Shown piece after piece: positions 6,117 to 32,866 of a stretch of DNA of 32,866 nucleotides. Each line of letters starts with the position of its first letter. Positions within the stretch are counted from its first letter, which is position 1. The DNA comes from Octopus bimaculoides. Taxonomy: Eukaryota. A program made the translations under genes and the position numbers. Under the pieces are notes generated by a model that did no database searches, was not told the origin of the DNA, and worked only from the letters and a program-made list of their open reading frames with translations. The stretch covers positions 30,581,065-30,613,930 of the forward strand of contig NC_068983.1 in assembly GCF_001194135.2 (NCBI RefSeq), written 5' to 3'.

Positions 6117-6209
6117 TTAAGCCGCTCGCTTCCTTACTTTAGAACCTCTCTTCTTTTTGTCTTGGAGTAGGCGCTGTCGAAGTTCCTTTCTTCTTGTATC
6201 TTCCTTTTC
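6117..6209 (-). CDS. NHEJ1: NHEJ1/XLF last coding exon (phase 0): EKEDTRRKELRQRLLQDKKKRGSKVRKRAA*
   Basis: Acceptor tattgttttcctag|GAA at 6209 and TAA at 6119-6117. The charged-then-basic C-terminus is what XLF tails look like, and the phase matches both candidate donors of the upstream exon. Confidence 0.75.
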   Translation of the reverse strand, partial: EKEDTRRKELRQRLLQDKKKRGSKVRKRAA

Positions 6210-8672: not shown

Positions 8673-8836
8673 CTTCTCTAAAATCTTTGACATGGACGGT
8701 GAAGTCACAAGAGGACATATTTCTACCTCATTCTTTACTGGCTCCTTTTTATCCAGGTATGAAGTGCCATTCAACCAAGAAGGACCACCTGCTTTGTAAG
8801 CACGTTCAGAACTTTCGTTGCTATCACTAGTATCAC
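8673..8836 (-). CDS. NHEJ1: NHEJ1/XLF penultimate coding exon (phase 1 to 0): GDTSDSNESSERAYKAGGPSWLNGTSYLDKKEPVKNEVEICPLVTSPSMSKILEK
   Basis: Strong acceptor ttaatttattttcag|GT at 8836, open frame, low-complexity S/E/K/P-rich tail. The donor is either AAG|GCATGT (8673, 164-nt exon) or GAG|GTAGAA (8727, 110-nt exon). Both are phase 0 and in frame with 6209. Confidence 0.7.
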
Positions 8837-10576: not shown

Positions 10577-11003
10577 CATCATCATCATCGTTTAACGTCC
10601 GCTTTCCATGCTAGCATGGGTTGGACAATTTGACTGAGGACTGGTGAAACGAGATGGCTACACCAGGCTCCAATCTGATCTGGCAGAGATTCTACAGCTG
10701 GATGCCCTTCCTAACGCCAACCACTCTGAGAGTGTAGTGGGTGCTTTTATGTGTCACTGGCACGAGGGCCAGTCCTGCGGTACTGGCAACGCCCACGCTC
10801 AAAATGGTGTATTTTACGTGCCATCTGCACGAGGGCCAGTCACACGGTACTGGCATGGCTATGCTCAAAAAGGTGTTTTTTNNNNNNNNNNCTGCACGAG
10901 GGCCAGTCACACGGTACTGGCATGGCTATGCTCAAAAAGGTGTTTTTTACGTGCCACCTGCACAGGAGCCAGTCCAGCAGCACTGGCAACGACCTTGCTC
11001 GAA
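10577..11003 (-). mobile_element. Long family A element (RTE LINE 3'-end derivative) with internal ~63-bp tandem units
   Basis: (cat)n-cgtttaacgtccgctttCCATGCTAGCATGGgttggac tail, ggatgcccttcctaacgccaacc motif, and repeated gcacgagggccagtc...tttacgtgcca units. Confidence 0.88.
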
Positions 11004-11329
11004 TGATTATTATTATTATTATTATTATTGTTGTTGTTGTTGTAGCAGACACAGAACCCACAGTGCTGAGACTCCTTATTTTCCTGCAACTTTATTTAAC
11101 TTATTTTGTCTCCATTTATAATGGTCAGCAATTCATTAAATCAACTTCATTAGTTCATTAGATGTAGTTGATAGTTTTTGTTACTTAGATGATCTTATTG
11201 ATGCTGAAGACTACAAGAGAACCTATAAATGGCTGTTCATTACCTACAATTTAAAAACAAGAAGAACACATTGGAGAATGTAGTTCTGGATACATAATGA
11301 CTGAAAAAAACAAACCATCAATCCTCACC

Positions 11330-15685: not shown

Positions 15686-15696
15686 TTTATTTTATT
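15686..15696 (-). terminator. Candidate polyadenylation signal of the zinc-finger exon
   Basis: Two overlapping AATAAA on minus (plus TTTATT at 15686-15691 and 15691-15696), about 225 nt after the stop. Confidence 0.5.
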
Positions 15697-15919: not shown

Positions 15920-16677
15920 TCAGCAACAAAGATTGTGATTTGGTATTTCTGTGTTGAGAATAACTGGCTGATTAAAACATTTCTCAGTATGGTACCGCAA
16001 TGATGAACGCCATTTATAAATCTTATTGCAGCGTCGACATCGATAATGTTGACTGCCATGCTGACCACGCATGTGAGTGGAAAGAGAGTCTTTTGACGAA
16101 CAAGTCTGCTCACAGATGTTACATCGAAACAACTCACCACCATGGTGCTTTGTACGACCACAGAAACGTTTATGGGATAACAAACTTTTTTTGAAACGAA
16201 ATGTTAAATTACATCGGTCACATTTTTCTTCTAGTATGTGATGTTTGTCAATGTGAGCTTTGTATGTCCAGAAACTATCAAAACCACGACCGCATATCGA
16301 GCAGTTGAATAGAAATTTTCCAAGGTGTTTAGAATTCATGTGACTCTGCAATCCATATTGAGTTTTATAGTGCTGACCACATTGTGGACAAGATATATTC
16401 CCAGCATTAAACAATGGCAATGGATCAGCCAGAACTGTTTGCTGAAGTTGACCATCAAAGTTGGCATTGATACTTAGAGCAGAGTCTCTGTGGTACATGC
16501 TGACATGATGAAGCAGAAGTTCTTGAGAACTGGTTGAAAATATGCACTGGTTGCAATCATAGATGTCAGGGCCAATGTTAACCTTCTGCTCATGTTCTTC
16601 TACAGCAGTCGACAGTTCAGCAAGCTCTGTGAACACATTGGAAGATTCTTCTATGGGTTTTGTAATTTCAAAGGTTT
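15920..16677 (-). CDS. Terminal exon encoding six zinc fingers (4 C2H2 + 2 C2HC), phase-1 acceptor; candidate alternative last exon of NHEJ1
   Basis: Acceptor catttcatttccacttccag|AA ACC TTT at 16677. The frame is open to TGA at 15922-15920 and there is no in-frame ATG before the first finger. Fingers: CNQC..HHVSMYH, CPQC..HMNSKH, CSIC..HIDKH, CDRC..HKRFC, CNIC..HMRGQH, CRRC..KWRSSLRYHTEKC. Confidence 0.92.
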
Positions 16678-17310
16678 CTGGAAGTGGAAATGAAATGTAA
16701 GACGGAATATAAATATTAGTTATCCAAATATTAGTTATCTAGAAATTACAAGATTTTAGTAAAAATTAACAAACAATTAACTATTAATCAAAAAATATTC
16801 TTTCTTTTATCATAAAAAACTCTTGTAGGTAAGTAGTAAGCACTGCCACTTGAATTAACACCAGAATATTATTACTATTTCACTGACTAACTTGAGCGAT
16901 TAAAGCAAAGCTGAGATTGACAACAGTTCAGTCAACCAAAAGTTAAAATAGTACATTAGTCACGGGAGCACAACAAGAGATATTACCTCTTTCATTTTCA
17001 TCTTTTTCAGTCATTAGTCAACCTCATCTTACTAAACAACCCTCTTAGTCACAACTCTTTTACTTTTTCAGAATAAAGTGACATGAATCTTAATTATACT
17101 GTATGATCTTTAGTCAGATGCTCTTTCATTCTCAATCTGCTACTCTCAAATAACATTTTGTCTTTGATAAAGAGCTTAGTCTAAAAAGCCCTTTATCTTA
17201 TGGCACACCTGATCAATTTTGTGAACTTTATCAATTGATTTTTTTTCCACAGCAAATGTGATGTCAAATTAATAAAATCATGGTTTTATTTATTTCCAAA
17301 GTGTTTCCAT

Positions 17311-17393
17311 AGGCAGGAGTGGCTGTGGGGTAAGTAGCTTGCTTACCAACCACATGGTCCCGGGTTCAGTCCCACTGCGTGGCACCTTGGGCA
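17311..17393 (+). mobile_element. SINE family B head only
   Basis: aggcaggagtggctgtggggtaagtagcttgcttaccaaccacatggtcccgggttcagtcccactgcgtggcaccttgggca is nearly identical to the 7556 head and is fused to an RTE 3' UTR. Confidence 0.9.
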
Positions 17394-18851
17394 CACAGGT
17401 GCTTGTACATGGCACCACCATGAGTGCTTTACACAGCCAGAAGGACGGGTCTTAATACTTTGGCTGTTGGGTATGGGTCTTCTTGAGTATGGTCAGACAC
17501 TGGGTATTTCAGTCCTTTGTCATTTTGCCTGAAAGGTTCAGTTCCTGGGTCTCCCACTTCCACGTGTTCCATCTGCTTTGAGAGATCATCACTTCTTTAT
17601 GGCACTGTCAGCATCCAGCTGCATCACGTAACCAAACCAGAGCAATCTCCTCTCTTGCACATAGCAACAAATTTTTCTTATGCCTAACTTCTCTCTCAGA
17701 ACACTGGTACTCTATTGAACACGTACACTTACATTACAAATCCAATGGAGCATACTAGCCTCATTCCTTTCTAACCTTTGCATGTCCTCTGCATTCAGAG
17801 CCCATGTCTCACTACCATGTAGAATTGCTGTCGTATACATGCATTATACAATCTTCCTTTCACTTGAAGAGAGAAATCTTTCATGGCCAACAGAGGTAAC
17901 AGCTCTCTGAATTTCTGCCATCCTATTACACTCTCTGCGCATCCTCTCCCACTACTAATTTGGTTCCCAAGGTAGCAGAAATTATCTACTACCGCTAACG
18001 AGCCCCCAGGGTATTTGAGAAAATCAATTTCCCGAGTCTCTAAAGTTTTTAAGGACCCTGTGCATCTTGCACATGCGAAAACTATCTTCTCTGATAACCT
18101 TCCAATTAACCCACTGTACCTCTTGTGTGTCCATAGCTTTTGCACTGGGTACACTGTATGGAGTTTCTGCCTACACCTTTCCTACAAATTCAATATGGCA
18201 ACCTACCTGAGGGGGATAGGGACCTGTCAGTTTTCTTGCTAAGTTAACCTTGAGGCCCTTAAATTCCAGGTTTTACTTCCACACATGGCATTTTTCATCT
18301 AGTTCTGATATGGAATTCACTATGATGACAAGATCATCAGCATATAGTCATACCCATGATGAAAAGGAGGGGACTAAGGTCCAAACCTTGATAAACCCTT
18401 ACCTGCACACCAAATTCTTCCCTGTACTTGTGGTTAACTCTCACCTTACTGACAGTATCTTTGTACATGGCCTGTACAGCTCTCACCAGCCACTTGTCTA
18501 TACCTAGCCTTCTCAGAGTCCATCATATCACACAGCAGGGCACTCTACTGAAGGCTTCCTCTAGATCAACAAATGCCAGTTATAATGTCTTATTCTTAGC
18601 AAAGTACTTTTCTTGTGGTTGCCTGACTATGAAAATAATGTCAGTAGTGTTTCTTCCCCGGACAAAGCAGGACTGCATTTTGTCTAGCCTAATTCTGCTC
18701 CTAATTAATTGGGCAATAACTCTCTGTAATTTTCATCACCCGGTTCAGAAAAATTGATGCCTCTAAAGTTGCTACCCTTGTAGCAGCAAACAATTATGCT
18801 GCTAAGCCAGTCACTGGGTATCACACCTTCTTGAATGACCTGATTAACTAT
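17393..18851 (-). mobile_element. Decayed RTE-clade LINE: RT domain through C-terminus into the 3' UTR
   Basis: Across frames: IVNQVIQEGVIPSDWLSSIIVCCYKG, LYADDL (~18330-18347), a Cys-rich QCTQCKLWTHKR..CARCTG insert, WQKFRELLPLL...KGRLYNAC, and an HGSETW-type segment. Many stops and frameshifts. Confidence 0.9.
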
Positions 18852-19427
18852 GCAGGGTGGCCAGCCCGTATCCTATCTTACCGGATAGTTGGAAAAATTG
18901 ACTCTAGTATTTATTTTCGAAGTCTGGTGATTATCAGTCTCTTTATGTGAACTGCTAAGTTATGATGACTTAAACAAACCAATACCAGTTGTCAGCTGTG
19001 ACTATCTCATCTTTTAAAATTAGTAACCAAATCTCATATCCCACTCCATCATCTTAAAAAGGGGACACATTGGATAGTAATAATGATGATGATGATGATA
19101 CAAAAATGATCATTGCTTGGAATTGCAAGAGTCCTCTGCAGGGTTCGTGAAGCATGATCAGTAAACAAGTGTCACCTTAGTTAACTGGCTGTGGGCAGCT
19201 GACACTTTCCACCACACCCAACAAAATAAAGCTGAAATTTTTCATGAAATAATTATAATAATAATAATAATAATAACAAAATTTTCAAGACAGAGGTACC
19301 CTTGATTGAAACGTCTGATCCCCAACAACAACAGTGGCAGCAATATGAATTTTGTATTTCTGTATGAAATAAGCAAACATTTACAAGAACATAATGATAA
19401 ATAAACACAAGTAAATAATGTAAATAT

Positions 19428-19763
19428 CGGAGACCCCCTTCGGTCATGAATGACCATGGGATTGCACATAGAAAGTTACCCTCCGAGGCACAAGTCCGGG
19501 AAAGGTTGTTTATGGAAGACCAGCAGTCGCCCATGCATACCGGTCTCCCCTCTCCACGCCACCAGTGTTATCCAAGGGAAAGACAAAGGCCAATACAGCT
19601 TGGCACCAGTGATGTCGCAACTCATTTCTACAGCTGAGTGAACTGGAGCAATGTGAAATAAAGTGTCTTGCTCAAGAACACAACATGCAGCCTGGTCTGG
19701 GATTCGAATTCATAACCTGATGGTCATAAATTTGACTCTAACCACTGAGCCATGCGCCTTCAC
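19428..19763 (-). mobile_element. Full-length tRNA-derived SINE (family E) with 9-bp TSD
   Basis: A-box TGGCTCAGTGG, B-box ATTCGAATCCC and 3' stem-loop GGTCA-TTCA-TGACC. TSD TGTAAATAT at 19419-19427 and 19764-19772. Confidence 0.9.
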
Positions 19764-19822
19764 TGTAAATATATAATGTAAATATATACACAATAATTAC
19801 CATACAAATAAATAATGGCAAA

Positions 19823-19891
19823 CATCATCATCATCATCATCATCGTTTAACGTCCGCTTTCCATGCTAGCATGGGTTGGACGATTTGACTG
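19823..19891 (-). mobile_element. Young family A tail running into N gap 19892-19921
   Basis: (cat)n cgtttaacgtccgctttccatgctagcatgggttggacgatttgactga. Confidence 0.85.
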
Positions 19892-19921
19892 ANNNNNNNN
19901 NNNNNNNNNNNNNNNNNNNNN

Positions 19922-19975
<54 letters not shown>

Positions 19976-20011
19976 AGTGTGTGTGTATACATACACATAT
20001 ACATTATATAT

Positions 20012-20330
20012 AAGGAGGTGAACTGGCAGAATCGTTAGCATGTCAGGTAAAGTAATTAGTGACATTTCATCTGTCTTTGCACTCTCGGTTCAAATGCCAC
20101 CAGGGTCATTCTACCTGGTCAGCTCCTGTCAACCATCCTACCCATGCATGCATGGAAGATGGATATTAAACGATGATGACGACAAGCTTCTTTCAGTTTA
20201 TGTCTATCAAATCCACTTACAAGGTTTTGGTCAACCTGAGGCCATAGCAGAAGACACTTGCACAAAGTGCTTTGCAATGGGACTGAAACCAAAACAGTGT
20301 GGTTGGGAAGCAAGAATCTTACCACACAGA
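20012..20330. mobile_element. Patchwork: SINE C2 head (+, 20012-20107), family A tail (+, 20110-20182), SINE B 5' part (-, 20183-20330)
   Basis: Each segment aligns to other copies in the window. Confidence 0.75.
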
Positions 20331-20370
20331 CAATATATATATATCTAACATATATATATATATATATATA

Positions 20371-20503
20371 TCTAACATCTATGCTAGCATAGGTTGGACG
20401 ATTTGACTGAGGACTGGCGAACCAGAAGGCTGCACCAGGCTCTAATCTGATCTGGCAGAGTTTCTACAGCTGGATGCCCTTCCAAACGCCAACCACTCCG
20501 AGA

Positions 20504-20507
<4 letters not shown>
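20371..20507 (-). mobile_element. Short family A copy flanked by (TA)n tracts
   Basis: atgctagcataggttggacgatttgactgagg...ccactccgagagtgt. Confidence 0.85.
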
Positions 20508-20546
<39 letters not shown>

Positions 20547-20990
20547 CTGAACCTTGCAAGGGAGATGACAAATGACTGCAACAAATATCAAAGTATTGTG
20601 CTGAAGAAGACCAATCCAAATCAGGTAAGCATGGAGAGATGGCTATTGAGTTGGCAGTGGTGGGTGGTGATGTTTTGTTAAATACTAAGATACACACACA
20701 TTCAGAGACTACAACATTCAAGAAATACAGATACACTCATAGACAGCCAACTATATATATACACATTATGCATACTCACACATAGATATATACATAGAGC
20801 TGTACACTCATGAAACACATACAATACAGTTATACTCACAATCAGACCTCTATGCCGGTTACATACACATACACACATATGAGGTCAGTTACACCAAATA
20901 AGAATTGACCTGGGATATGATGATTCATTCAACCTATACCAGGATGGAAAAATTGTGGTAAAAATAATGATGATATTTTATATAATATAT

Positions 20991-21210
20991 AAGGAGGTGA
21001 GCTGGCAGAATCATTAGCATGCTGGGTAAAATGATTAGTGACATTTCATCCGTCATTACGTTTTGGGTTCAAATGCTGCCAGGGTTGACTTTGCCTTTCA
21101 TCCTTCCCGGGTTGATAAAATAAGTACCATTTGAGCACTGTGGTCCATGTAATCTACTTAGCCCTTCTCCCAAAATTGCTGGCTTTGTGTCAAAATTTGA
21201 AACCAATATC
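20991..21210 (+). mobile_element. SINE subfamily C2 (aaggaggtgagctggcagaatc head)
   Basis: The head is shared with 20012 and the central gactttgcctttcatcc domain is present. Confidence 0.85.
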
Positions 21211-21505
21211 CTATGTTTTCCATCTCCCACCAGATCATCCTATCAGGGCTTTACTCTCATTTGACGTAGCAGCTACAGGCTGCAGGAGGTATCATGGCAG
21301 GCCCCGCACACCAGATGGGTGGACATGATTAAGGAAGATCTCCAGAGGCTTGACATCACTGTGGAGGATGCAGGAGAGCTGGCACAGGACCAGCAGTAAT
21401 GGAGAGCACTAGTGGATCTAGTTGGCTCTACACGTGATGATATCTGAGACCACTAACTTGGAATGACCCCAGCCCCATCAAGCAAGAGCATGACCTACCT
21501 AGTAG
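21211..21505 (+). mobile_element. 3' end of a different RTE-clade LINE
   Basis: With one frameshift: HLPPDHPIRALL...GRPRT-RWVDMIKEDLQRLDITVEDAGELAQDQQ*WRALV, a typical RTE ORF C-terminus. Confidence 0.8.
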
Positions 21506-21639
21506 TCAAAAGAAAACAGAACACTACTAACTGGAAGTGGCCATACTCGATATACAGAGAGAAAGTAAGTAGGTAAAAAAAGATGTAGGAGGATTGCAAG
21601 CAGGCTGACAAAGGATTTTATATTTTAAAAATGCATAGG

Positions 21640-22228
21640 AATAGTTAGTTGATGGCAACAGTGGAGGTGAGTGTTGCAAAAGCATTGTAGTCAAGGTAAG
21701 GATGAAGTGAAAAATGTTCAGGGAATTTATCTTTGTCAGTAACAAAGGACTTCTTTCTGCAAATGAAGAGTAGACTGTACAACACTTGTGTACAAAGTGT
21801 GATACAATATATGGTAGTGCTTATGGGCACTGTGCATGGGGATATGTAAAAGCTGAAAAGAAATGGAGTATGCTCCACTAGGTGCGTGAGAGTAACATGC
21901 AAGAACAGCAGAGCACAAGTGTGTTGGGTGAAAGACTCCAGCTTTAGAGGTATCAAGTGAGTTGTGCAGGAGGGAAAACTGTTCTGGCATGAATAAGTGA
22001 TGTGTATGAAGAATGCAAGTTGGGCGAAAACAATGTAAAATGAAACAAAGAGGAAGTTAAAAAGAAACACAAAGAAGACTTGGGAATTTGTGGTGAAATT
22101 TGATCTCAAAGTGTTGGACCGCACAAAGGTGATGACAAATGGCTGTGACAAGTGGGAAGATATTGTATAGAAACAGACCTGCTGAACTCATGCCAGCACG
22201 GAAAAGCAGACATAAAAATGATTATGAT
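21640..22228 (+). mobile_element. Highly decayed RTE LINE RT C-terminus ending in the family A tail
   Basis: LQMKSRLYNTCVQS...FRGIK*VVQEGKLFW parallels the 17395-17900 segment and ends ctcatgccagcacggaaaagcagacataaaaatgattatgat. Confidence 0.7.
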
Positions 22229-22329
22229 AGTTCTTAATCTCACAGAGGCAATGACAAGTGACCAAAACTGTTGGCAGTTTGCTATGCTTGAGAAGACACA
22301 TTATGCTTAGTGGAATTAAAGTCATGGCC

Positions 22330-22548
22330 AGTGCAGCAATGTGTAAAAGGCATCTGTGCCAGTGACACATTAAAGTCACCCGTGCTGGTGACATGTTAAA
22401 GGCACTCAGTGGAGTGGTTGGTGTTAGGAAGAGCATCCAGCTGTAGAAACCAAGCCTGGAGTTGCTTTCCAGCTGACCAGTTCCAGTCAAACTGTCTAAC
22501 TCATGCCAGCATGGAAAATAGGCACTAAATGATGATGATGATGATGAT
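22330..22548 (+). mobile_element. Older family A element
   Basis: gagtggttggtgttaggaagagcatccagctgtagaaac...catgccagcatggaaaa...(gat)n. Confidence 0.85.
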
Positions 22549-23211
22549 AAACCAGCAAGCTGGGTGTGACCTAATACATCTACCTCTCTTCTATTATCCC
22601 ATCTGTCTATCAACCCCAAATTCATACAAAAGTTGATACCAGCAGCAACCAACAAGTCATGGTTTCTTCCATTCCTTTCTCCTTTAAACATTCTTGAAGG
22701 ACCTGCAATGGATGTTCTCTTTCCTCTCTAATTAAGCCATAAAAGGAAATTTCTATACAAGAAAATAGAATGATTAAATAATGCTTCAAATGAAAAATAC
22801 CAAATTAAACTAAAAACATTGAGCTGCCAGATAGCTTTTAATTAAGCAGAGTTTGAATTTGTTGTAAACTGGTTTAGTTCTTTTGTTTGCACCCTTCAGG
22901 AATGGTAAAAAGATAAGCATTAGTAACTAACATAACAAGTATTGGAAACTTATCAATTTTTTTTGGTTTCAACAGCAACATGCTCTGTTCTAATTGATTT
23001 GTTGCTACAACCATGTCTGGTTTGTTGCACTTTCTCAATCAATACCATACTTAACCTAGCTAAGACAGACTGATAGCCAAACTAGATGGCACATTAGATT
23101 AGTGTTAACATATTTAATGTAGGGAACATTCAATGTATATTTAACTAGTAAATGTACATTTGCTGGAGTAGGAAAATAAAATTGTTTAGAGAATAAATGA
23201 TTCAGAGACAG

Positions 23212-23440
23212 TTAATTCTTTTAATATCAACCTGCTTGAGACTACTTCGGTTTTAAAGTCTTATTCAAATTAAAATCTTCCACCATGACTTAGAAATAAA
23301 AACCTCTTTTATGTTCCAAACACCACCATAATAGTGAAAAAATTATTTTACTAAATTCCCATCAATTTCTTGATTATTTAAAAAATTAATTGGAACACAT
23401 AATCTGTGTAATTCTTAAAAAATATAGTCACAAAAGGGTT
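23212..23440. mobile_element. Decayed piggyBac-type MITE, family P2
   Basis: ttaattcttttaatatcaa ... tatagtcacaaaagggtt; the interior resembles 12110-12326. Confidence 0.55.
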
Positions 23441-24322
23441 CAGTTAGTATTAACATATCCATTGCAGAGAGCCAAGACTGTGAGATAGTGAAACACATAG
23501 GGCTAACGAGTGACAAAAAAATCTTGTCCATATTGTCAATATGGGCCTAAAAGAAACCATCTGAATTTCAGTCAGATGTAGATGTGATTTTGATATAGAG
23601 GAGGAAAGATCTGTCTTGGTATAGTTTTATACACAAGATTTTATGGGAATTAACAGAAAAAAACAAAACAACAACTTTGGTTTATGATATGAAGTTTTAT
23701 GATATTTATGAAACTATAATGAACAAAGTTATAAGAATTGTGTAAACAGTAAAATAATAATGGAGAAACGCAAGTAAATGATGGCAGCAAGGGAAAATAA
23801 ATAATGATGAGAATGGTAATTCTTTTAGGCTGAGTAAACCACCTTTTATAAAACAGACACATTTCTCTATTTTAGTGGCATGTATTCCTGTCATTGGATC
23901 AATGGAACTGTTTATTCATTGATTATAATGCAAATGGCAAAGTATTTCAGACAGTGGTACCATTGACATAATACCAAAGCAGAATCAGTGACACATTATA
24001 TGATTTGACTGGCTGATTATTTAATATCATTCACAAGATTCAGGCTGACTCAAGGCCATGAAATAAAAGACACTTGTTCAAGGAACTTTGCAGCAAAATC
24101 AAAAGCAAAACTTTTTGATTCAGAAGATTCTTAACTGTATTATGCTCTTGGAACATAATACAATGATAAATACAGAAAGGATATGCCAAGACAAAACTCA
24201 CAAAAGGGACCACTGTAAACCTGAAAAACAGATTGTTGACTATGGTGGTGGTGATGATGATGATGATGACAACAATAACAGGTGACAATGACAAAATTTT
24301 ACAAAAGAATTAGGACAACTAC

Positions 24323-24443
24323 CTGGATCTGCTTTGCTACATTTGTGCAACCATGTGTATTTTGTCATAATTTGCCGATAAAGATCCTGACCATAACTTT
24401 CAAAAGCAGTTGTCCCCAACAGTTTCACATTATCTTCAAATTC
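24323..24443 (-). CDS. NHEJ1: NHEJ1/XLF exon (phase 0 to 1): EFEDNVKLLGTTAFESYGQDLYRQIMTKYTWLHKCSKADP
   Basis: tgcag|GAA ... CCAG|gtagtt, 121 nt. AFESYGQDLY aligns to human PFVMNLQDLY (recalled sequence). Confidence 0.88.
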
Positions 24444-24829
24444 CTGCATTTTTCAAAGAAAAAAGAAAGAAAGAAATAACAATAAAACAAAATAATTAAG
24501 CTTCATCAATTAATCAAAGACAAAAAAAATGAGGCAATGCAGTTGGAACATTAAACATCAATAACAACAATAACAAACATAAGTACTGTTACCTTGGAAA
24601 TATTTAATAAGACTTGATATTACATGTAAAATGATCCTTTCCAATGGTATTAAAGCAACTGGAAGGAAACATGACTGTTTGGTTAGCATATGAGTCCTGC
24701 ATAACTATAACCAAAAGATCTCATATGCAGAGATGAAGAATTTTCGGCTGTGGATTAAGTTCCATGGACTGTGATGAATACAAGGAATTGGACCAGGTAT
24801 TGTCAGATACAGTGACTGAAAGAAGTGGC

Positions 24830-25080
24830 TATAGTAGCCACTGCAGCTCATTCAATTTCAACCAGTTGTGGAAGGTTGATTTATGTCTTTTGATCTGAAT
24901 GGCTTCTTTAATCTGTAGGTTACCAACTATACTGCCTGTAGCTTTGACAGTGACTGCCCTATCTTTATTTATGTTCCTAAATTTATCAAAGTGTTTCATG
25001 AACAATGATGTCCATCTAGAGATGTTTCTTGATTCTGTTGCATTACAGCCAAGTAGCATTGGCTATGTGATATTCATGAC
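24830..25080 (-). mobile_element. Decayed Penelope-like element, GIY-YIG endonuclease C-terminal part
   Basis: Across frames: GCNA / TRIKKHL / SLFMKHF / LQIKEAIQIKRHK. These match the C..C..RIKEH..KH..KIKEAI.I pattern of PLE GIY-YIG domains. The YIG motif itself appears deleted. Confidence 0.55.
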
Positions 25081-25425
25081 TGAACCTGGTACACACATAG
25101 CAGATGGGGTAGTTGGCCACAATGTATAGGTTTGTCATTGGAGAGTTACTTCTGAGATGAACATTTCCATAGGGAAAGTCAGTGATCAGTTGCATATCCA
25201 GCTCTTCTTTATGGATAGCCTTGTAGGAAACAGAAGAGATAGTCCAGGGTCAAGAAAAGTGGAGAAAAGTTGTCTTCTATGGGCTATATTCAAATTGGGA
25301 ATGAAGGGCTTAAGTAAGAAACTCTATGTCCTGGCAAAAAAGACAGGGTTGTAACAACTGGAATGTTTCTGATCATAGGGTTAGCTTGATCAGGACTCCT
25401 TGGGTTAAAATAACAATCCACTCAC

Positions 25426-25487
25426 CTTTGATAGCACCATATTGTTTCCAAAGGATGTTTCATCAAAGTAGACAGTTGCTAATTGCT
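25426..25487 (-). CDS. NHEJ1: NHEJ1/XLF exon (phase 1 to 0): KQLATVYFDETSFGNNMVLSK
   Basis: atcatttcag|AG ... AAG|gtgagt, 62 nt. Aligns to human DRLKTEPFEENSF (recalled sequence). Confidence 0.88.
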
Positions 25488-25652
25488 CTGAAATGATGAT
25501 ATAAAAATATTAATATTAGAAGATTTAATTTTTACCCAAATAGTGAAGAATAACAGAACACAGTTTGTCAATGTATCAATCTATAACAGGAACTCTGTTC
25601 AAAAAGAACAATTTAAAAACTGCTTCTTGTTGATGTGTACATCTTTTGCCTA

Positions 25653-25846
25653 TGTATATATATATATATATATACAGATATATATATATATATACATACA
25701 GATATATATATATATATACATACAGATATATATATATATATATATACATACAGATATATATATATATATATATATACATACAGNNNNNNNNNNNNNNNNN
25801 NNNNNNNNNNNNNNNNNNNNNNNNNNNNNNNNNNNNNNNNNNNNNN

Positions 25847-25892
<46 letters not shown>
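25653..25892. repeat. Compound (TA)n-CATACAGA higher-order microsatellite and (TA)n, with N gap 25784-25846
   Basis: Units of about 24-30 bp: (TA)n CATACAGA. Confidence 0.95.
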
Positions 25893-25895
<3 letters not shown>

Positions 25896-26050
25896 GAGAA
25901 TGTACGAAAAAAACAACAACAGACGAGGACAGGTGGTGTAAACAACAAAAGGATGTATTAGTATGACGCTCGGGAATACGGAAAGTCTTTAACGTTTCGA
26001 GCTACGCTCTTCAACAGAAAGAATACGGAGAAAACAAGGAGAAAAAAAAT
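25893..26050 (-). mobile_element. Penelope-type terminal repeat fragment with a hammerhead-like core
   Basis: Minus strand reads ctttctgTTGAAGAgcgtagctCGAAACGTTaaagactttc, CpG-rich and adjacent to (TA)n. The family assignment is inferred. Confidence 0.45.
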
Positions 26051-26330
26051 TGAATGGTGTTGGTCAACGGTCTATCATAGCTTCTGCTGACTGGGAAGAA
26101 ATAAGTGATATAGGATATAGATATCCACTTCATACAGCTCAACTGAGTAGCGCTCGGATAGAGCTTCAGGAATATAAAATTAAGGAGGGGAGAAAACAAA
26201 TTCAAAGGCTGATGTATATATTCATTCAATCCATATATTTATATATTTACATTTATAAATTTTTATACGTTTGTAAATTTTTATATGTGTATGAATTTTT
26301 ATATATTTACAAATTTTCATGTATATGTAT

Positions 26331-27722
26331 GTGGGCTATGACCCTCTCCATGACTTTCGATCCAACAATTTGATATCTCTGTAATTATTCGTATCTAATG
26401 CATCACCTTAACCTTTGTAGCAGTTGACTATGGTGCTGCTACACCAGTCATTGGGTATGATTTCTTCATGTATCACCTGATTGACTATACAGGTGACTAG
26501 ACTATAGCCGACACCACCAGATATTTTAAGCATTTCTGCGGTGATTCCTGGTGGGCCGGGGGCTTTCCCTGTCTTCATACCCTTAATTGCTTTATCTACC
26601 AAGGTACTGTCAATTCGGATAGCTGGTCTCTTGGTTGGGTCGACATTCGGTAGACTTTCTTTCTCCCATTCATTCTCTTCATTTAGCAACCTTTCATAGT
26701 GATGTCTCCAAGTCTCTCTCCTTGCAGCCTCATTGAATGCAAGTGAGCCATCATTCATGCAGACACATTTCTCTCTTATGACATCACGATTCTCTCTCAC
26801 ACACTGTCTTGCAACACGAGCCACCTCAAGTCTTTGGTCCTCATGACCCATAACATTGGCAAATTTTTTTCTGGCTAAGTAAACCTGTCTCCTAGCTTCC
26901 CTTCTGGCAATCTGATACAATTCCCTGCTACCACCATTCTTCCAGTCTTTCCAAGCCTGCTTCTTTTCCCTAATGGCCCTGTCAATTACATTGTTCCACC
27001 ACCATGTTACCTTGGGTTGAGATGGGACTTTGCACCATCCACAGATCTGGTCAGTAGCCCTCAACAGGTTGTCCCATACAAACCTCCAGTTATCTTCCAC
27101 ATCATGTGATGCTATATCCCCCTCTATTTTGTCAAAAGCTTTGAATAACACGTTTCTAAATCTCTGTCCATTTGCAGGATCCTTAAGCTTCCAGACCCTT
27201 CTTCTCCATGCTGGTCATCTTCTGGGTATCCATTTAGCCCCGATCCTGAAGTCGCTAACTACTAATCCATGTTGTGGGGTGCATTCTTCACCTAAGAAGG
27301 TTTTGGCATTTATAAGTAGCCATTTTTACCGTTTCCTGGTGAGGATGTAACCAATTTGACTAGTGTATCTACTAGATCGGTAGGTGACTGGCAGGTTTCC
27401 TGAAGTTAGTATTGCAGACCATAAGGTCATTTGCATCACAGAATCCAGCAGCCTGGTTCCCTCCTCATTGCGGGAACCAAAACCATAGCCTCCATGTATG
27501 CCATGGAAGACTCCTGCATGTTGTCCAACATGCCCATTGAAGTCACCAGCTACAAAGAGAAGGTCTCTGTCATTCGTCGTCGAGGTAATCTGCAAGAGGG
27601 TGTCATAAAATCGGTCTTTCTGTTCATCAGGTAGCCCCAGCTGAGGGGCATAGGACGAGATAATGATTGCTAAACCATGTTGCAGCACTAATCTAATCTT
27701 AAGTATTTTATCACAGGTTCTG
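26331..27722 (-). mobile_element. RTE-clade LINE fragment: APE endonuclease C-half, linker and start of RT
   Basis: SSYAPQLGLPDEQKDRFY...VAGDFNGHVG (APE), then WWWNNVIDRAIREKK...KAPGPPGITAEMLK...IPNDWCSSTIVNCYKG*GDALDTNNYRDIKL. Frameshifts and stops are present and both ends are truncated. Confidence 0.95.
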
Positions 27723-27913
27723 ACAAGAAACTTATTTAATTACAAATAAACTATGAATTAATATCAAAGTTTACAACATGCAATTATTCTTGCAAGTTTG
27801 AGAAGCATTAAATTAATGACTGACAGGTTGAAGGAGCTTGTGGTTCCTTGCTTTCTCAGTTTGGTCTAAGATATAGCAGTTAAAATGACAAAAAAATATT
27901 TAAAATGATTTAC

Positions 27914-28052
27914 TTTGATTAAGTTTAACAGACTGGGCTCTGTAATCCTCAATTTCTAAATCCTTTTTGGAAATAATATGAATAAGTTCTCTCTGGCGAC
28001 GATTCAACTCGGACACCATCATTAAAAGTGGAATAGTCATGTTCTCAGAGAC
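27914..28052 (-). CDS. NHEJ1: NHEJ1/XLF coiled-coil exon (phase 0 to 1): VSENMTIPLLMMVSELNRRQRELIHIISKKDLEIEDYRAQSVKLNQ
   Basis: cttgtcatcag|GTC ... CAAA|gtaaat, 139 nt. Aligns to human VSQHLIRPL...RELATLLHMKDLEIQDY (recalled sequence). Confidence 0.93.
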
Positions 28053-28297
28053 CTGATGACAAGGGAAAAATAGAAAGAAAACTAAAATAACAAAATAGTT
28101 GAAAAATTTAGAAGCAAAATTATTTTATTTACTTTCAGAATATTTTTCATCACAAATATATAAAAAGGCTTAGAAGCTGACTTAGACTAAAATACACACT
28201 AGAAAGTCTGCATTTCTGATAAATGAATTCTTTATTAACTCATCCAAGAAAAATAAATAAATAAATAACTGTAACAAAGAAAATTGATAAAAATTAC

Positions 28298-28492
28298 CAT
28301 TTCTTCATGTGCTGGTTCTCCAATCAATTGCCAAGTGAAAGGGAACCTAGAAAGTTTGGAATTAATCCATATATGCATAGTTCCTTTGTCATCTTTGGAA
28401 ATTCTCAAATTGTCAGACGGATTTTTATCTATATTCAGTTTAATATGCTCAAGAATTTTAGAAATTGGAGCTTCTAGATTGGGATTAAGTTC
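28298..28492 (-). CDS. NHEJ1: NHEJ1/XLF head-domain exon (phase 0 to 0): ELNPNLEAPISKILEHIKLNIDKNPSDNLRISKDDKGTMHIWINSKLSRFPFTWQLIGEPAHEEM
   Basis: ttgttttag|GAA ... ATG|gtaatt, 195 nt. ELNPNLEAP resembles human ELNKRLTAP and SKLSRFPFTW resembles SELSGLPFYW (recalled sequence). Confidence 0.93.
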
Positions 28493-29266
28493 CTAAAACA
28501 AAGTAAAATAAATTAGAAAATATAGTATCATTTCATAATAAATAAAACTGAGATAAAATTATAACTACATCAATAAATCAGAGTGAAGCATGAATTTATA
28601 TTAAAGTTCCTAGGTACGTTTCACCATTATGGTTGTTTGGAGGCCTGCGATAGAATGAAATATACTAAGAATACATGGTTAATAAGCTCAATTTGAATCT
28701 CTATGGAATCCTTTTCTTACAACAGTCATCTAAATTTCTCAGTCAATAAAGAAAAAAAGCAGAAACTATGGATACTGCAGCTCTTCACAATTACACATAT
28801 AAAGAAATAGCCAACTGTGAAGATAATTCTTTCTGCTTTTATTTTTTTATACTGAATGACTGCAGTACTTCTTTTGGGTAGCCTACCATTGCTTTCTCCA
28901 CTTTTCTTCTATGGAACCAGAGTTATCATGAAGTGTGTCATCCAAATGCTGATTTATGATGTGATGGATATTTACTTCCATTGATCTATAAGTATTTGTT
29001 CATTCAGTTATTCATTTAGCATTCTCCCCCCCCCCCCCATGGATTAGATGGGGAGTTATTAGAGGCAAGATATTATAGCCTAATGCACTTCTTGTCACCA
29101 GTCCTCCTCTGTTTTTCAAATAAAAGGTTTTTTTTTTTATTAGCAGTCTTTTAAAGAGCAGAACAATAGGTCATAATGTCAACATCATCATTTCACTTGA
29201 GTGGCAACAAGAATGGAATATGAACAATATTAACAATGCACACACACACACATATGTATGTATGTA

Positions 29267-29475
29267 TATAGGGTGTCCATAAATTGTGTTTACAACTTCC
29301 ACAATTTATCATCAAGCTATGTTGCATACAACCACTGGAGCCTATGTGGAAGTATTCTGATTTTTCTAATAAAAGTTGTTTTGTGTGCCTGTGTTTTCCA
29401 ATAAACTCTAAGTTATCCTTACTTTTCTTATTTCTCTGAACTTTTGAAATTGTAAAGGTAATTGGATATTCTATA
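29267..29475. mobile_element. Decayed Tc1/mariner-type MITE
   Basis: tatagggtgtccataaattgtgtttacaacttc versus the reverse complement of the right end, tatagaatatccaattacctttacaatttc; TA flanks. Confidence 0.45.
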
Positions 29476-30211
29476 CACACACACACAAAGCTTCCTGCAG
29501 TTTCCATCCATCAAATTCACAATCAGCCCAGTGATTATCCAAAGTAGAATGCAATGGGACTGAACCCAAAACTATATGGTTGCTTGGCAAACTTTTTAAC
29601 CACATGCCCATACCTACAGCAGTGACTGTGACCATTTTTCAAGCTCTCTGAATGGTGGCAGGAAGTTATGCACAGAGCAGAAAGCTAGCTTGAATACTTG
29701 TAACAGAGTAGACTCCACTAAAGGCAATCAGGGGCCAAATGGTGATGTTAAACTGAATGATAGATGAAGTTTACCACCCATGAAAAGAAACAATCCCTCT
29801 GATGAGCTACCATACAGTTTCCATCTATTCTGTTCCACTCACAATGAATTTGTCACCCCAAGGCCATAATAAGTGTCATACAGTGGAATTGAATCCACAC
29901 CCCGTGGATGTAAAATAAACTTAACCAAACAGTCATGTTTAATCTGTGATCTAGTTACTGTGTAGCTTCATCCAGCAGTGACTTCAACAGCATATAAACA
30001 ATTGACAGATTTATGAGCAGGAGCCTAAAGATATAACATGCAAGAGACACACACAAACCAACTTTTATATGGTTGCTCAACCTGCTAAGAGCAGCAGCTA
30101 CTGCCATCATAAATAAGGGTACAACACAGTGAGAAATGTATTCCTAGACATACATTAAATGAATGTGATGGCCATGACAGAATAGGCTAAACAACAATAA
30201 CATGCAGGAGA

Positions 30212-30390
30212 ATCATCATCATCATCATCATCGTCATCATCGTCGTTTAACGTCTGCTTTCCATGCTAGCATGGGTTGGACGATTTGACTGAGGACTGGT
30301 GGACCAAGTGGCTACATGAGGCTCCAATCTGATTTGGCAGAGTTTCTACAGCTGGATGCCCTTCTTAACACCAACCACTCCGAGAGTGTA
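30212..30390 (-). mobile_element. Short young family A copy
   Basis: (cat)n tail through ccactccgagagtgta. Confidence 0.88.
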
Positions 30391-30639
30391 GAATATACTC
30401 CATTTATATGTAGAAATATACTGCACCCACCATTGTAGTTTTTGTAGATACAAGGTACAGTGTGAGAGTGTCGGCAAGTTGCTTATAAAGCACACAGTGT
30501 GGGTCAAGAGATCTAGTCACTGTTGCAGCTGATCTTCAGTGTATTTATATTATTTTTTCACACGTTTAACTAGCAGCAGTAACAGGTTATTCTAATGCAG
30601 ACAGTGACTGACACATTTTATATTGAGTCTTTTTTTACC

Positions 30640-30882
30640 TGTGCTGGTGCCATGTAAAAAACACACACTGGTTCCATGTAAAAACACCTGTGATGGCGCC
30701 ATGTAAAAAGCACTCAGCACACTCTGTAAAATGGTTGGCATTAGGAAGGGCATCCAGCAATAGAGATCATACCAAAACAGATAATGGGGGACTGGTGCAA
30801 GCCTTCGGCTTGCCAGCTTCTCCAGTCAAACCATCCAACCGATGCCAGCATGGAAAATGGATGTTAAATGATGATAATGATG
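30640..30882 (+). mobile_element. Older family A element with three short gtgccatgtaaaaa(g)cac units
   Basis: The units are followed by ggttggcattaggaagggcatccagc and the tail. Confidence 0.85.
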
Positions 30883-31417
30883 GTCAAAGGGCAGGGATTA
30901 CAGAATTAGTAGAGTGCATTAGTACTTTAAGCTCTGAAATCACATTCCACTAGGGTTGACTATCTTTTATCCCTGTAAGTTTGGGAGATTAAATATCAAC
31001 TGACTGGGGATTATTGGATTTACTACAAAAATGGCTGTGAGGCTAAGAAGTTTGCATTACAACCATGTATTTCTCAGTTTGCTCTCACCATACAACACAG
31101 TCTTCTACTGTAACCTTGTGTTGACCAATACTTTGTGTGTAAATTCTCTGCTCTTTACTTTCTGAGTTCACAATCCACTGAAGTCAACTTTATCACCACC
31201 CCACACTTGAGGGTCGATAAAATAAAGTATCAATTGAGTACTAAGATTGATTCCTCTTTCCCTTTCTCTCTCTGAATCAGCTATCTCCAACAAAGATGCT
31301 AGCTAGTCCCAAAAGAGGATTCAGCTAAGGATCAGCAACCTGTTATTACAGTAATAAACCAAAGAAAACATTTGCAGCTCTGAGGCAGAAATGGTGGTTG
31401 TGGATGGAGAAAGGGTA

Positions 31418-31723
31418 GTGGCACGTGAAAAGACATTCGAGCGAGTTCGTTGCCAGTACCGTTGGACTGGCTCCTGTGCAGGTGGCACGTAAAATACACC
31501 ATTTCGAGCGTGGCCGTTGCCAGTACCTCCTGACTGGCCTTCGTGTCGGTGGCACATAAAAGCACCCACTACACTCTCGGAATGGTTGGCGTTAGGAAGA
31601 GCACCCAGCTGTAGAAACTCTGCCAAATCAGATTGGAGTCTGGTGTAGCCATCTGGTTCACCAGTCAAATCGTCCAACCCATGCTAGCATGGAAAGCGGA
31701 CGTTAAACAATGATGATGATGAT
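31418..31723 (+). mobile_element. Long young family A element with internal ~60-bp units
   Basis: Inverse homologue of 10577-11003. Confidence 0.88.
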
Positions 31724-31732
31724 ATATCTACA

Positions 31733-31970
31733 TACATGGGGTGAGTCAAAAGTAGTGCTCAATTCCTGTTTTAGGTTTGATATGTACGACTTCCCAACTG
31801 GGAGATAATTTTGACTCTTAATTCTTGTTTCACAGGTTGGGATATCAAAGAGTATTAACAACATGATCCAGATTTAGTAACTTTCAAAAAACTGTCAGTA
31901 ATAACCTGCAGAGCAACAAAGAAAGGCATGGCTTCTCAGAGACCAGGTGCTACTTTTGACTCACCCTGTA
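31733..31970. mobile_element. Tc1/mariner-type MITE
   Basis: TA|CA(T)GGGGTGAGTCAAAAGTAG ... CTACTTTTGACTCACCCTG|TA, an ~19-bp TIR with TA TSD. Confidence 0.85.
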
Positions 31971-32524
31971 TATGAAGAACAACCAGTAAATTAAACAGAA
32001 GTACTTAGTAGTATTCATATCCAATCTAGCTATCTATCTTTAAGGACCACTTTGCTAGTCATTCTTATGGTGTTGATAAAGTACCAAAATGCTGGGGATC
32101 AATATTATCAACTAAAGGAGTAATCGAATACTTGTTCCTGATAAATTTGTGACTGTGGCTCTACATAGTCACTTGACTAGCTAAACATGGCAGCCAAATC
32201 TCTTAAATAATATGTTACTGTAGAAACAAAGCAAAAGGTTCCAAATGTATTATAAGTCTAGAGGGTGCTACTGGACATGTGTTGTTGTGCTGAGTATACC
32301 AAACAAGTTACTCATTTTAGTCTTCTATTAGAATTCTGTTCACTTTTATGATGCTATATAAGAATATGTATGGCATTCCTTCGATATTGGTCTACAGAGT
32401 GTCATTGTAAGGAGATGACGTCATTCACCCTCTTTTTCAGCTTAGCCTCTTTATCTATGTCATGAGGGGAGGTTTATGGGTGAATGAAGTTGTGTACCAT
32501 TATTAAAGGATTGCATATATATAT

Positions 32525-32790
32525 ATCACGTCTGGTCTTATAGCCTTTTCCGTTTGATTTCCTGTCTTGTTTTCTGTCCGCCACTACATTCCTCCATGGT
32601 ACAAATTTAATTTGTGGTCCGTCGGAAGAGCCATTTTAACGATGTGTCCTGCCCTAACTCTTTGAAACGCCAGTGTTAGAATGGTGGCAGCTGATGAAGG
32701 AAAATGTTCTTTATGTGGCCTGTGTGTTTTCTGTACTCTGGTTATTATTTTTTTGTCTACATTTTGTTTGCAATGTCTTGTACCCAGATA
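32525..32790. repeat. Unclassified interspersed repeat, possibly a Penelope-type terminal region
   Basis: A GC-richer block between (TA)n tracts that contains GAAACGCC (32664) and CTGATGA (32691). The family was not identified. Confidence 0.3.
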
Positions 32791-32866
32791 TGCATCTATA
32801 TATACAGGTAGATGTAGGTATGCACATACATGTACGTATATATGCATATACTCATTTATTATTTGT

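What the first reader, a model, noticed from the sequence alone, without database searches (positions are those of the whole stretch)
15920..24443. Candidate XLF-zinc-finger isoform: a six-finger alternative last exon inside the NHEJ1 intron
Seen: the XLF exon 24443-24323 ends in phase 1 (CCA G|gt). The intact zinc-finger exon lies 7.6 kb downstream on the same strand and starts in phase 1 (cag|AA ACC). It has no ATG before its first finger, and it has its own stop and AATAAA. Splicing gives ...KCSKADP-E-TFEITKPIEESSNVFTELAEL...YDCNQC, 251 further residues. The canonical phase-1 acceptor (8836) lies beyond it, so the layout is that of mutually exclusive last exons. Established: the XLF head and coiled coil dimerise and bind XRCC4, while the disordered C-tail carries the Ku-binding motif/NLS. 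Inference: one isoform would swap the Ku-recruitment tail for a zinc-finger array, possibly targeting an NHEJ scaffold to specific DNA, or using the XLF dimer as lola/mod(mdg4) use BTB. I know of no described XLF-ZF isoform but could not search.
Basis: partly seen in the sequence, partly recalled or inferred. Interest (0 to 1): 0.92.

Follow-up and report, generated by a model that had tools for sequence, protein, structure and literature searches.

The report
Octopus XLF–zinc-finger alternative last exon
Inside an intron of the octopus DNA-repair gene NHEJ1/XLF lies a conserved six-zinc-finger exon which existing RefSeq and UniProt gene models already splice onto the XLF core in place of its Ku-binding tail; the exon is real and old, but the isoform is already annotated and its function is untested.

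Summary
The window is Octopus bimaculoides chromosome CM046603.1, with NHEJ1/XLF on the minus strand. Exon 5 (24443-24323) ends in phase 1. The zinc-finger (ZF) exon (16677-15920) starts in phase 1, has no ATG before finger 1, and has its own stop.

Joining the exons reproduces RefSeq XP_014769226.1 (= UniProt A0A0L8HUQ8, 490 aa) residue for residue. So the "new" isoform is already an annotated model. O. sinensis has equivalent isoforms X1-X3 beside a canonical 323-aa X4. No searchable paper cites any of these protein accessions.

The ZF exon lies in the same intron, on the same strand and in the same phase in O. vulgaris, O. sinensis and Argonauta hians. In Argonauta it is only 917 nt past exon 5. 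It is under purifying selection (dN/dS 0.07), and all 24 zinc ligands are invariant.

The assembly gap sits in the intron, and its flanks are collinear in gap-free relatives.

Caveats: I could not examine RNA reads. Argonauta's annotation has no fusion isoform. Linkage to NHEJ1 is unknown in a more distant cephalopod contig. The canonical path has two further exons, not one.

Verdict: a real, conserved alternative terminal exon and a new member of a known kind. Its function is unknown.

The parts
28298..28492 (-). NHEJ1/XLF coding exon 2 (second half of the head domain). Exon 1 lies outside the window, at L003 10001-10198.
   Evidence: Pfam XLF N-terminal domain hit on this stretch. The exon table reproduces XP_014769226.1.
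27914..28052 (-). XLF exon 3, coiled coil. Ends in phase 1 (CAAA|gtaaat).
   Evidence: Pfam XLF_CC, E 6.6e-8. Exon table.
25426..25487 (-). XLF exon 4, 62 nt (KQLATVYFDETSFGNNMVLSK). Goes from phase 1 to phase 0.
24323..24443 (-). XLF exon 5, the last common exon. Donor CCAG|gtagtt in phase 1.
   Evidence: The donor is conserved in Argonauta.
16678..24322 (-). Intron between exon 5 and the ZF exon, 7,645 nt. It contains the assembly gap 19893-19921 and same-strand open-reading-frame fragments that look, by eye only, like a degenerate reverse-transcriptase (LINE-type) remnant (about 17798-18872).
   Evidence: Pfam found no family in the two fragments scanned. Apart from exon 5, the only block conserved with Argonauta is the ZF exon start plus about 50 nt before its acceptor; two weak matches lie in inverted orientation and look like repeats.
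15920..16677 (-). Alternative 3'-terminal coding exon. It has a phase-1 acceptor, an acidic linker, six zinc fingers (C2H2, C2H2, C2H2, C2HC, C2H2, C2HC) and a TGA stop.
16132..16138 (-). Internal phase-1 donor G|GTGAGT within the ZF exon. The O. vulgaris 503-aa model uses it to make an in-frame four-finger cassette joined to exon 6.
   Evidence: It is GCGAGT in Argonauta and absent in L001, so it is not conserved.
15686..15696 (-). Two overlapping AATAAA motifs 224 and 229 nt after the ZF stop.
   Evidence: They are not conserved in O. vulgaris or O. sinensis; a conserved pair lies about 664 and 730 nt after the stop.
8673..8836 (-). Canonical XLF exon 6. Phase-1 acceptor; ends with a GC donor (AAG|gcatgt).
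   Evidence: Same junction as in O. sinensis isoform X4.
6117..6209 (-). Canonical XLF last coding exon: the basic tail ...QDKKKRGSKVRKRAA* (Ku-binding-motif/NLS-like).

Best explanation
Octopod NHEJ1 is one gene with two 3' ends.

Exons 1-5 encode the complete structured XLF module: head, coiled coil and fold-back. After exon 5 (phase-1 donor at 24323) the transcript can take one of two routes.

(a) It splices to exon 6 (8836) and exon 7. This gives canonical XLF of 323 aa with the basic Ku-binding/NLS-like tail.

(b) It splices to the intronic acceptor at 16677 and ends downstream of 15920. This gives a 490-aa protein in which the tail is replaced by an acidic linker and six zinc fingers. 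Fingers 2-4 and 5-6 are spaced like tandem DNA-binding C2H2 arrays.

Shown here: the anatomy, the exact match to existing gene models, the conserved position and phase, and purifying selection.

Inferred: that the junction is used in real mRNA. Also inferred is that the product is a dimeric XLF scaffold, probably still able to bind XRCC4 and to pair with canonical XLF, which reaches nucleic acid through its fingers rather than through Ku.
For: - The conceptual splice equals XP_014769226.1 / A0A0L8HUQ8.
- The source names for this accession include both 'PREDICTED...112-like isoform X1' and '...112 isoform X1'. I read that as two naming rounds, which is my inference.
- O. sinensis has ZF-ended isoforms X1-X3 and canonical X4.
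- Pfam on the 490-aa protein: XLF 1.6e-24, XLF_CC 2.7e-9, zf-C2H2 4.5e-14.
- Residues 16-228 align to human XLF 9-226.
- The same intron, strand and phase-1 acceptor are found in O. vulgaris, O. sinensis and Argonauta, where the exon sits 917 nt after exon 5 with no other conserved block between them.
- dN/dS between O. bimaculoides and Argonauta is 0.070 for the ZF exon and 0.058 for XLF exons 1-5, at dS of about 1.2.
- All 24 zinc ligands are invariant in four sequences.
- There is no in-frame ATG before finger 1 in any species, so an upstream coding exon is required.
- Fingers 2-6 align as a block with ZNF568, CTCF and PRDM9 arrays.
Against: - I saw no RNA evidence directly.
- The Argonauta hians RefSeq gene has a longest product of only 326 aa, and its ZF exon is unannotated.
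- In the most distant ZF ortholog (L001, 62% identity) no XLF exon lies within 10 kb on either side.
- No Logan transcript contig carrying the full fusion protein is on record.
- The O. vulgaris annotation joins the pieces differently, as a cassette.
- A phase match alone has a 1-in-3 chance.
Confidence: 0.75

Rival explanations
1. The ZF exon is the last exon of a separate gene nested in, or overlapping, NHEJ1. Its own 5' coding exon(s) lie elsewhere, and the XLF-ZF models are chimeras made by annotation pipelines.
For: - Argonauta's annotation has no fusion.
- L001 shows no XLF exons within 10 kb.
- The O. vulgaris pipeline used O. bimaculoides UniProt proteins as evidence, so it is not independent.
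Against: - No conserved ATG-bearing exon lies between exon 5 and the ZF exon; in Argonauta that interval is only 917 nt.
- None of the four genome records lists a separate gene there.
- Models with the same exon 5-to-ZF junction exist for two species and in the GenBank-derived UniProt entry.
Confidence: 0.13
2. The main product uses the ZF exon as an in-frame internal cassette (16677-16138, four fingers). It is spliced through the internal GTGAGT donor to exon 6, so it keeps the Ku tail, as in O. vulgaris CAI9719355.1 (503 aa).
For: - The donor G|GTGAGT is strong and in phase 1, and the model exists.
Against: - The donor is GCGAGT in Argonauta and absent in L001.
- Fingers 5-6 and the region up to the stop are the best conserved part: 86% identity over the last 147 aa to L001. 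That would be unexplained if this part were intronic.
- The model is an EVidenceModeler consensus of mixed evidence.
Confidence: 0.07
3. The ZF open reading frame is a non-functional relic, either a captured ZNF fragment or transposon cargo, that gene predictors pick up only because it is long and in phase.
For: The intron is full of repeats and retroelement-like debris.
Against: - dN/dS is 0.07 across saturated synonymous divergence.
- All zinc ligands are invariant.
- The acceptor and about 50 nt upstream are conserved in an otherwise unalignable intron.
- No terminal inverted repeats flank the exon.
Confidence: 0.02

Closest known systems
RefSeq XP_014769226.1 / UniProt A0A0L8HUQ8 (O. bimaculoides 'zinc finger protein 112 isoform X1'); O. 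sinensis XP_036356896.1, XP_036356897.1 and XP_029633395.1
   Same: Identical protein: the window's exons 2-5 plus the ZF exon give residues 67-490 exactly.
   Different: These are automatic models named after the fingers. No paper in the library cites any of the accessions, and the XLF-plus-fingers architecture appears not to have been discussed.
CSB-PGBD3 (human ERCC6 intron 5 piggyBac transposase used as an alternative 3'-terminal exon; PMC2268245, PMC3459987)
   Same: - A DNA-repair gene whose first five exons are alternatively spliced to an intron-resident ORF.
- The intronic ORF supplies a different C-terminal half, presumed DNA-binding here.
- Both isoforms come from one promoter, and the arrangement has been conserved over a long time.
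   Different: Here the captured ORF is a C2H2/C2HC finger array with no sign of transposon ends. The host is the NHEJ scaffold XLF, not a SWI/SNF ATPase. Expression has not been shown.
Drosophila lola / mod(mdg4) type loci (common 5' dimerisation exons plus alternative 3' zinc-finger exons; from my own knowledge)
   Same: A common N-terminal dimerising module is joined to an alternative 3' exon that encodes fingers, including C2HC-type fingers.
   Different: There is one alternative ZF exon, not dozens. The common module is XLF rather than BTB, and there is no hint of trans-splicing. The other isoform is a classical repair factor, not another transcription factor.
Canonical XLF/Cernunnos (human NHEJ1; PDB 2R9A, 2QM4)
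   Same: The head and coiled coil are homologous (E 7e-19). The canonical octopus isoform has a basic C-terminal tail.
   Different: The ZF isoform lacks that tail altogether. None of the 20 XLF homologs listed from other molluscs carries a zinc-finger domain.

Membership tests
XLF/Cernunnos (NHEJ1) | XLF N-terminal head domain (Pfam PF09302) | tested here: met
   E 1.6e-24 on the 490-aa product. E 4.9e-5 on the window's exon 2 alone.
XLF/Cernunnos (NHEJ1) | XLF coiled-coil region (PF21928) and end-to-end similarity to solved human XLF | tested here: met
   XLF_CC E 2.7e-9. phmmer to 2R9A E 7e-19, query residues 16-228 against human 9-226.
XLF/Cernunnos (NHEJ1) | Basic C-terminal Ku-binding motif / NLS | tested here: not met
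   The tail is present only in the canonical isoform (exon 7...KKKRGSKVRKRAA). It is absent from the ZF isoform, which ends ...NHNLCC. Ku binding itself cannot be tested here.
XLF/Cernunnos (NHEJ1) | Homodimerisation and XRCC4 binding through the head (human L115 region) | not testable with these tools
   The alignment puts F at the position of human L115 (SRFPF against SGLPF) and keeps L65. This is suggestive only.
Tandem C2H2 zinc-finger DNA-binding proteins | C-x2-C-x12-H-x3-4-H/C units with conserved ligands | tested here: met
   Pfam zf-C2H2 E 4e-16. Six units; all 24 ligands are invariant in four sequences.
Tandem C2H2 zinc-finger DNA-binding proteins | Canonical spacing of about 7 residues between fingers, allowing them to wrap the major groove | tested here: inconclusive
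   Fingers 2-3-4 and 5-6 have 6-7-residue linkers and align en bloc to ZNF568, CTCF and PRDM9. The linkers are not TGEKP. Finger 1 is about 33 residues away, and the gap between fingers 4 and 5 is 12 residues. DNA binding was not tested.
Alternative 3'-terminal exon fusions of the CSB-PGBD3 kind | An intron-resident ORF with its own splice acceptor, stop and poly(A) signal, in frame with the upstream host donor | tested here: met
   Acceptor, phase and stop. AATAAA motifs lie downstream, and conservation is seen only for the distal pair.
Alternative 3'-terminal exon fusions of the CSB-PGBD3 kind | The fusion mRNA or protein has been demonstrated | not testable with these tools
Only gene models are available.
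Alternative 3'-terminal exon fusions of the CSB-PGBD3 kind | The captured ORF is transposon-derived (terminal repeats, transposase) | tested here: not met
   No flanking inverted repeats beyond chance. The ORF is a finger array only.
lola / mod(mdg4)-type loci | BTB common exons and many alternative ZF or FLYWCH 3' exons | tested here: not met
   The common part is XLF. Only one ZF ORF was seen in the window's minus-strand open frames and in the protein mappings of the four loci.

The most novel reading that the evidence does not exclude
The XLF-ZF isoform is an expressed, ancient (octopod-wide, perhaps coleoid-wide) protein. It would tether the XLF-XRCC4 end-bridging scaffold to specific DNA sequences or structures independently of Ku, making it a sequence-directed end-joining or chromatin-bridging factor with no counterpart in other animals.
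Probability: 0.15. Interest if true: 0.8.

Novelty: new member of a known kind. Interest (0 to 1): 0.5.

Why it matters
XLF is normally brought to DNA breaks through Ku by its short basic tail. A conserved isoform that keeps the whole dimerising, XRCC4-binding body but replaces that tail with six zinc fingers would be a natural experiment in re-targeting the end-joining scaffold. It would also be a second example, after CSB-PGBD3, of a repair gene sharing its 5' half with a presumed DNA-binding module.

The isoform has sat in RefSeq and UniProt under a misleading 'zinc finger protein 112' name. Its constraint equals that of XLF itself across octopod superfamilies, so it is unlikely to be noise. 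The public octopus RNA-seq and Iso-Seq data should make it easy to test.

Tried and rejected
- Word-indexed protein searches with the ZF exon and with XLF exons 3, 5 and 6: these missed the RefSeq fusion proteins. They returned only ORF calls on unspliced DNA contigs (P0001; P0002, a read-through of an intron). The full HMMER scan found the cluster.
- tblastn and tblastx of XLF exons, octopus and decapodiform-like, against L001: no hits within ±10 kb.
- JGI metagenome scan for ZF orthologs: only unrelated 24-40% identical finger proteins.
- Names of the next-best ZF hits: 'uncharacterized' giant finger proteins at 36% identity or less, so they give no clue to the exon's origin.
- Transposon origin: no terminal inverted repeats.
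- Literature: no paper cites any of the five protein accessions, and a search combining NHEJ1, zinc finger, alternative last exon and cephalopod found nothing relevant.
- The Argonaut genome paper gave no divergence date, so I quote only dS.


Full report
**What is in the sequence**

On the minus strand, 24443-24323 is an open exon (EFEDNV...KCSKADP) with acceptor ...aatgcag| and donor CCAG|gtagtt, which leaves one base (phase 1). At 16677 a pyrimidine-rich acceptor (...catttccacttccag|) opens a reading frame in phase 1. The frame runs to TGA at 15920. At 272 stop-free codons it is the longest open stretch on that strand of the window. Pfam sees C2H2 fingers (E 4e-16). By inspection there are six fingers: C2H2, then after about 33 residues C2H2-C2H2-C2HC, then C2H2-C2HC. 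There is no in-frame ATG before finger 1.

**The assembly gap**

The gap 19893-19921 lies in the intron beside an (AT)n run. The window is identical to GCA_001194135.2 chromosome CM046603.1, which still carries the gap. In the gap-free O. vulgaris locus the gap's two flanks map in the same order and orientation. In O. sinensis the nearest aligned blocks on either side are also collinear. The gap therefore has no bearing on exon order, strand or frame.

**The host gene is NHEJ1/XLF**

- A three-frame Pfam scan of 24300-32866 found the XLF N-terminal domain at about 28492-28300 and XLF_CC at about 28050-27915.
- The full exon table, in window coordinates, is:
  - exon 1: outside the window
  - exon 2: 28492-28298
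  - exon 3: 28052-27914
  - exon 4: 25487-25426
  - exon 5: 24443-24323
  - canonical exon 6: 8836-8673 (GC donor)
  - canonical exon 7: 6209-6117
- The canonical path gives a 323-aa XLF ending ...KKKRGSKVRKRAA.
- Exons 1-5 (238 aa) align to human XLF residues 9-226, the whole crystallised head, coiled coil and fold-back (E 7e-19).
- The alternative junction therefore sits where the disordered tail begins.

**The isoform already exists in databases**

- A full HMMER scan of 1.8 billion representatives with the ZF exon returned one close hit, P0003 (95% identity, ZF at residues 240-430 of 503).
- Its 90% cluster holds:
  - O. bimaculoides XP_014769226.1 ('zinc finger protein 112 isoform X1', 490 aa), which is also UniProt A0A0L8HUQ8 and a EukProt entry;
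  - O. sinensis XP_036356896.1 and XP_036356897.1 (527 aa) and XP_029633395.1 (490 aa);
  - O. vulgaris CAI9719355.1 (503 aa).
- Concatenating the exons above with 16677-15920 reproduces XP_014769226.1 exactly.
- The whole protein scores XLF 1.6e-24, XLF_CC 2.7e-9 and zf-C2H2 4.5e-14.
- O. sinensis also has a canonical isoform X4 of 323 aa.
- From my own knowledge of the NCBI pipeline, extra isoforms are normally kept only when transcript or RNA-seq alignments support them. I could not read the evidence lines, so this is a lead, not a test.
- No paper in the library cites any of the five protein accessions, and a search combining NHEJ1, zinc finger, alternative last exon and cephalopod found nothing relevant.

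**Comparative test**

- The ZF exon lies between XLF exons 5 and 6, on the same strand and with the same ...CCACTTCCAG|AAAC acceptor, in O. vulgaris (L004), O. sinensis (L005) and Argonauta hians (L006).
- In Argonauta it starts only 917 nt after the exon 5 donor (GATCCAG|gtagtc).
- In that interval nothing but the last ~50 nt before the acceptor aligns collinearly to Octopus, so no hidden first exon is conserved there.
- Between O. bimaculoides and Argonauta, dN/dS is 0.070 for the ZF exon and 0.058 for XLF exons 1-5, at dS of about 1.2.
- A much more distant ortholog (L001) comes from an ENA metagenome assembly. It is 62% identical overall and 86% identical over the last 147 aa.
- L001 also lacks a starting ATG and has a phase-1 acceptor (ctgtag|AG).
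- All 24 zinc ligands are invariant.
- No XLF exon lies within 10 kb of the L001 exon, and the contig could not be extended. Linkage beyond octopods is therefore open.

**What argues for caution**

- Argonauta's RefSeq gene has a longest product of 326 aa and leaves the ZF exon unannotated.
- The O. vulgaris model uses an internal G|GTGAGT donor (16138|16137) to make an in-frame four-finger cassette that keeps the tail.
- That annotation is an EVidenceModeler consensus which took O. bimaculoides UniProt proteins as input.
- The internal donor is not conserved: it is GCGAGT in Argonauta and absent in L001.
- The cassette model would also discard the most conserved fingers. I therefore rate it as a minor form or an artefact.

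**Mechanism**

The best-supported reading is one promoter and two 3' ends. One choice is splicing of exon 5 to the intronic ZF exon plus polyadenylation. The other is splicing on to exons 6-7.

The ZF isoform keeps everything needed, by homology, for XLF dimerisation and XRCC4 contact. It loses the Ku-binding/NLS-like tail and gains an acidic linker and six fingers. Blocks 2-4 and 5-6 are spaced like DNA-binding arrays.

Whether it targets end joining, acts as a dominant modifier of canonical XLF, or has a function unrelated to repair is inference.

**Comparison with known systems**

- It works like CSB-PGBD3, a repair gene whose exons 1-5 are alternatively spliced to an intron-resident ORF (PMC2268245, PMC3459987). 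Here there are no transposon hallmarks.
- It works in part like lola/mod(mdg4), but with a single alternative exon and a non-BTB core.
- None of the 20 listed XLF homologs from other molluscs carries a zinc-finger domain.

**Verdict**

This is a real and conserved alternative terminal exon. It is a new member of a known kind, already present as an automatic gene model, undescribed in the searchable literature and untested for function.

Noticed in passing
window 8673 (minus strand), exon 6 donor: Canonical XLF exon 6 ends with a GC donor (GAGAAG|gcatgt), giving a GC-AG intron. The same junction is used in the O. sinensis canonical isoform X4.
   Followed up: partly
L004 34249-34660 and L005 34022-34450: In O. 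vulgaris and O. sinensis a ~280-nt element with a tRNA-like head is inserted about 30 nt after the ZF stop. It comes with a ~114-nt duplication of the exon's 3' end, and the second copy has CGA in place of TGA. The odd 527-aa O. sinensis isoforms X1 and X2 join the first copy to the second. This may mean the transcripts came from a haplotype without the insertion.
   Followed up: partly
window 16132-16138: An internal G|GTGAGT donor in phase 1 inside the ZF exon would allow an in-frame four-finger cassette joined to exon 6, as in the O. vulgaris model. It is not conserved outside Octopus.
   Followed up: yes
window 26411-27739 and 17798-18872 (minus strand): Retroelement-like ORF remnants sit in NHEJ1 introns on the gene's strand. 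The ORF at 27739-27329 gives a weak, below-threshold match to Pfam Exo_endo_phos_2 (E 0.003). The other fragments look reverse-transcriptase-like by eye but have no Pfam hit.
   Followed up: partly
window 2-823 and 1714-2023: A G+C-rich 51-nt tandem satellite (80-90% matches between copies) lies on both sides of the 889-N assembly gap. More copies lie beyond the window in L003.
   Followed up: partly
window 10644-11120 (+) and 31321-31680 (-): Two copies of an interspersed repeat, in opposite orientation, give similar long ORF artefacts (…GYTRLQSDLAE.LQL.ALPNANHSESVVGAFMCH…). Related ORF fragments recur in other introns, for example near 20467 and 30349.
   Followed up: no
tool behaviour, versus 26: The word-indexed protein search never returned the XLF-ZF cluster (P0003/P0153), although that cluster is 95-100% identical to the queries. 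Only the exhaustive HMMER scan found it, so negative results from the indexed search should not be over-read.
   Followed up: partly
L006 19328-20067 (Argonauta hians): An intact, strongly conserved ZF exon is not part of any annotated gene model in the Argonauta record. This is probably an annotation gap.
   Followed up: partly
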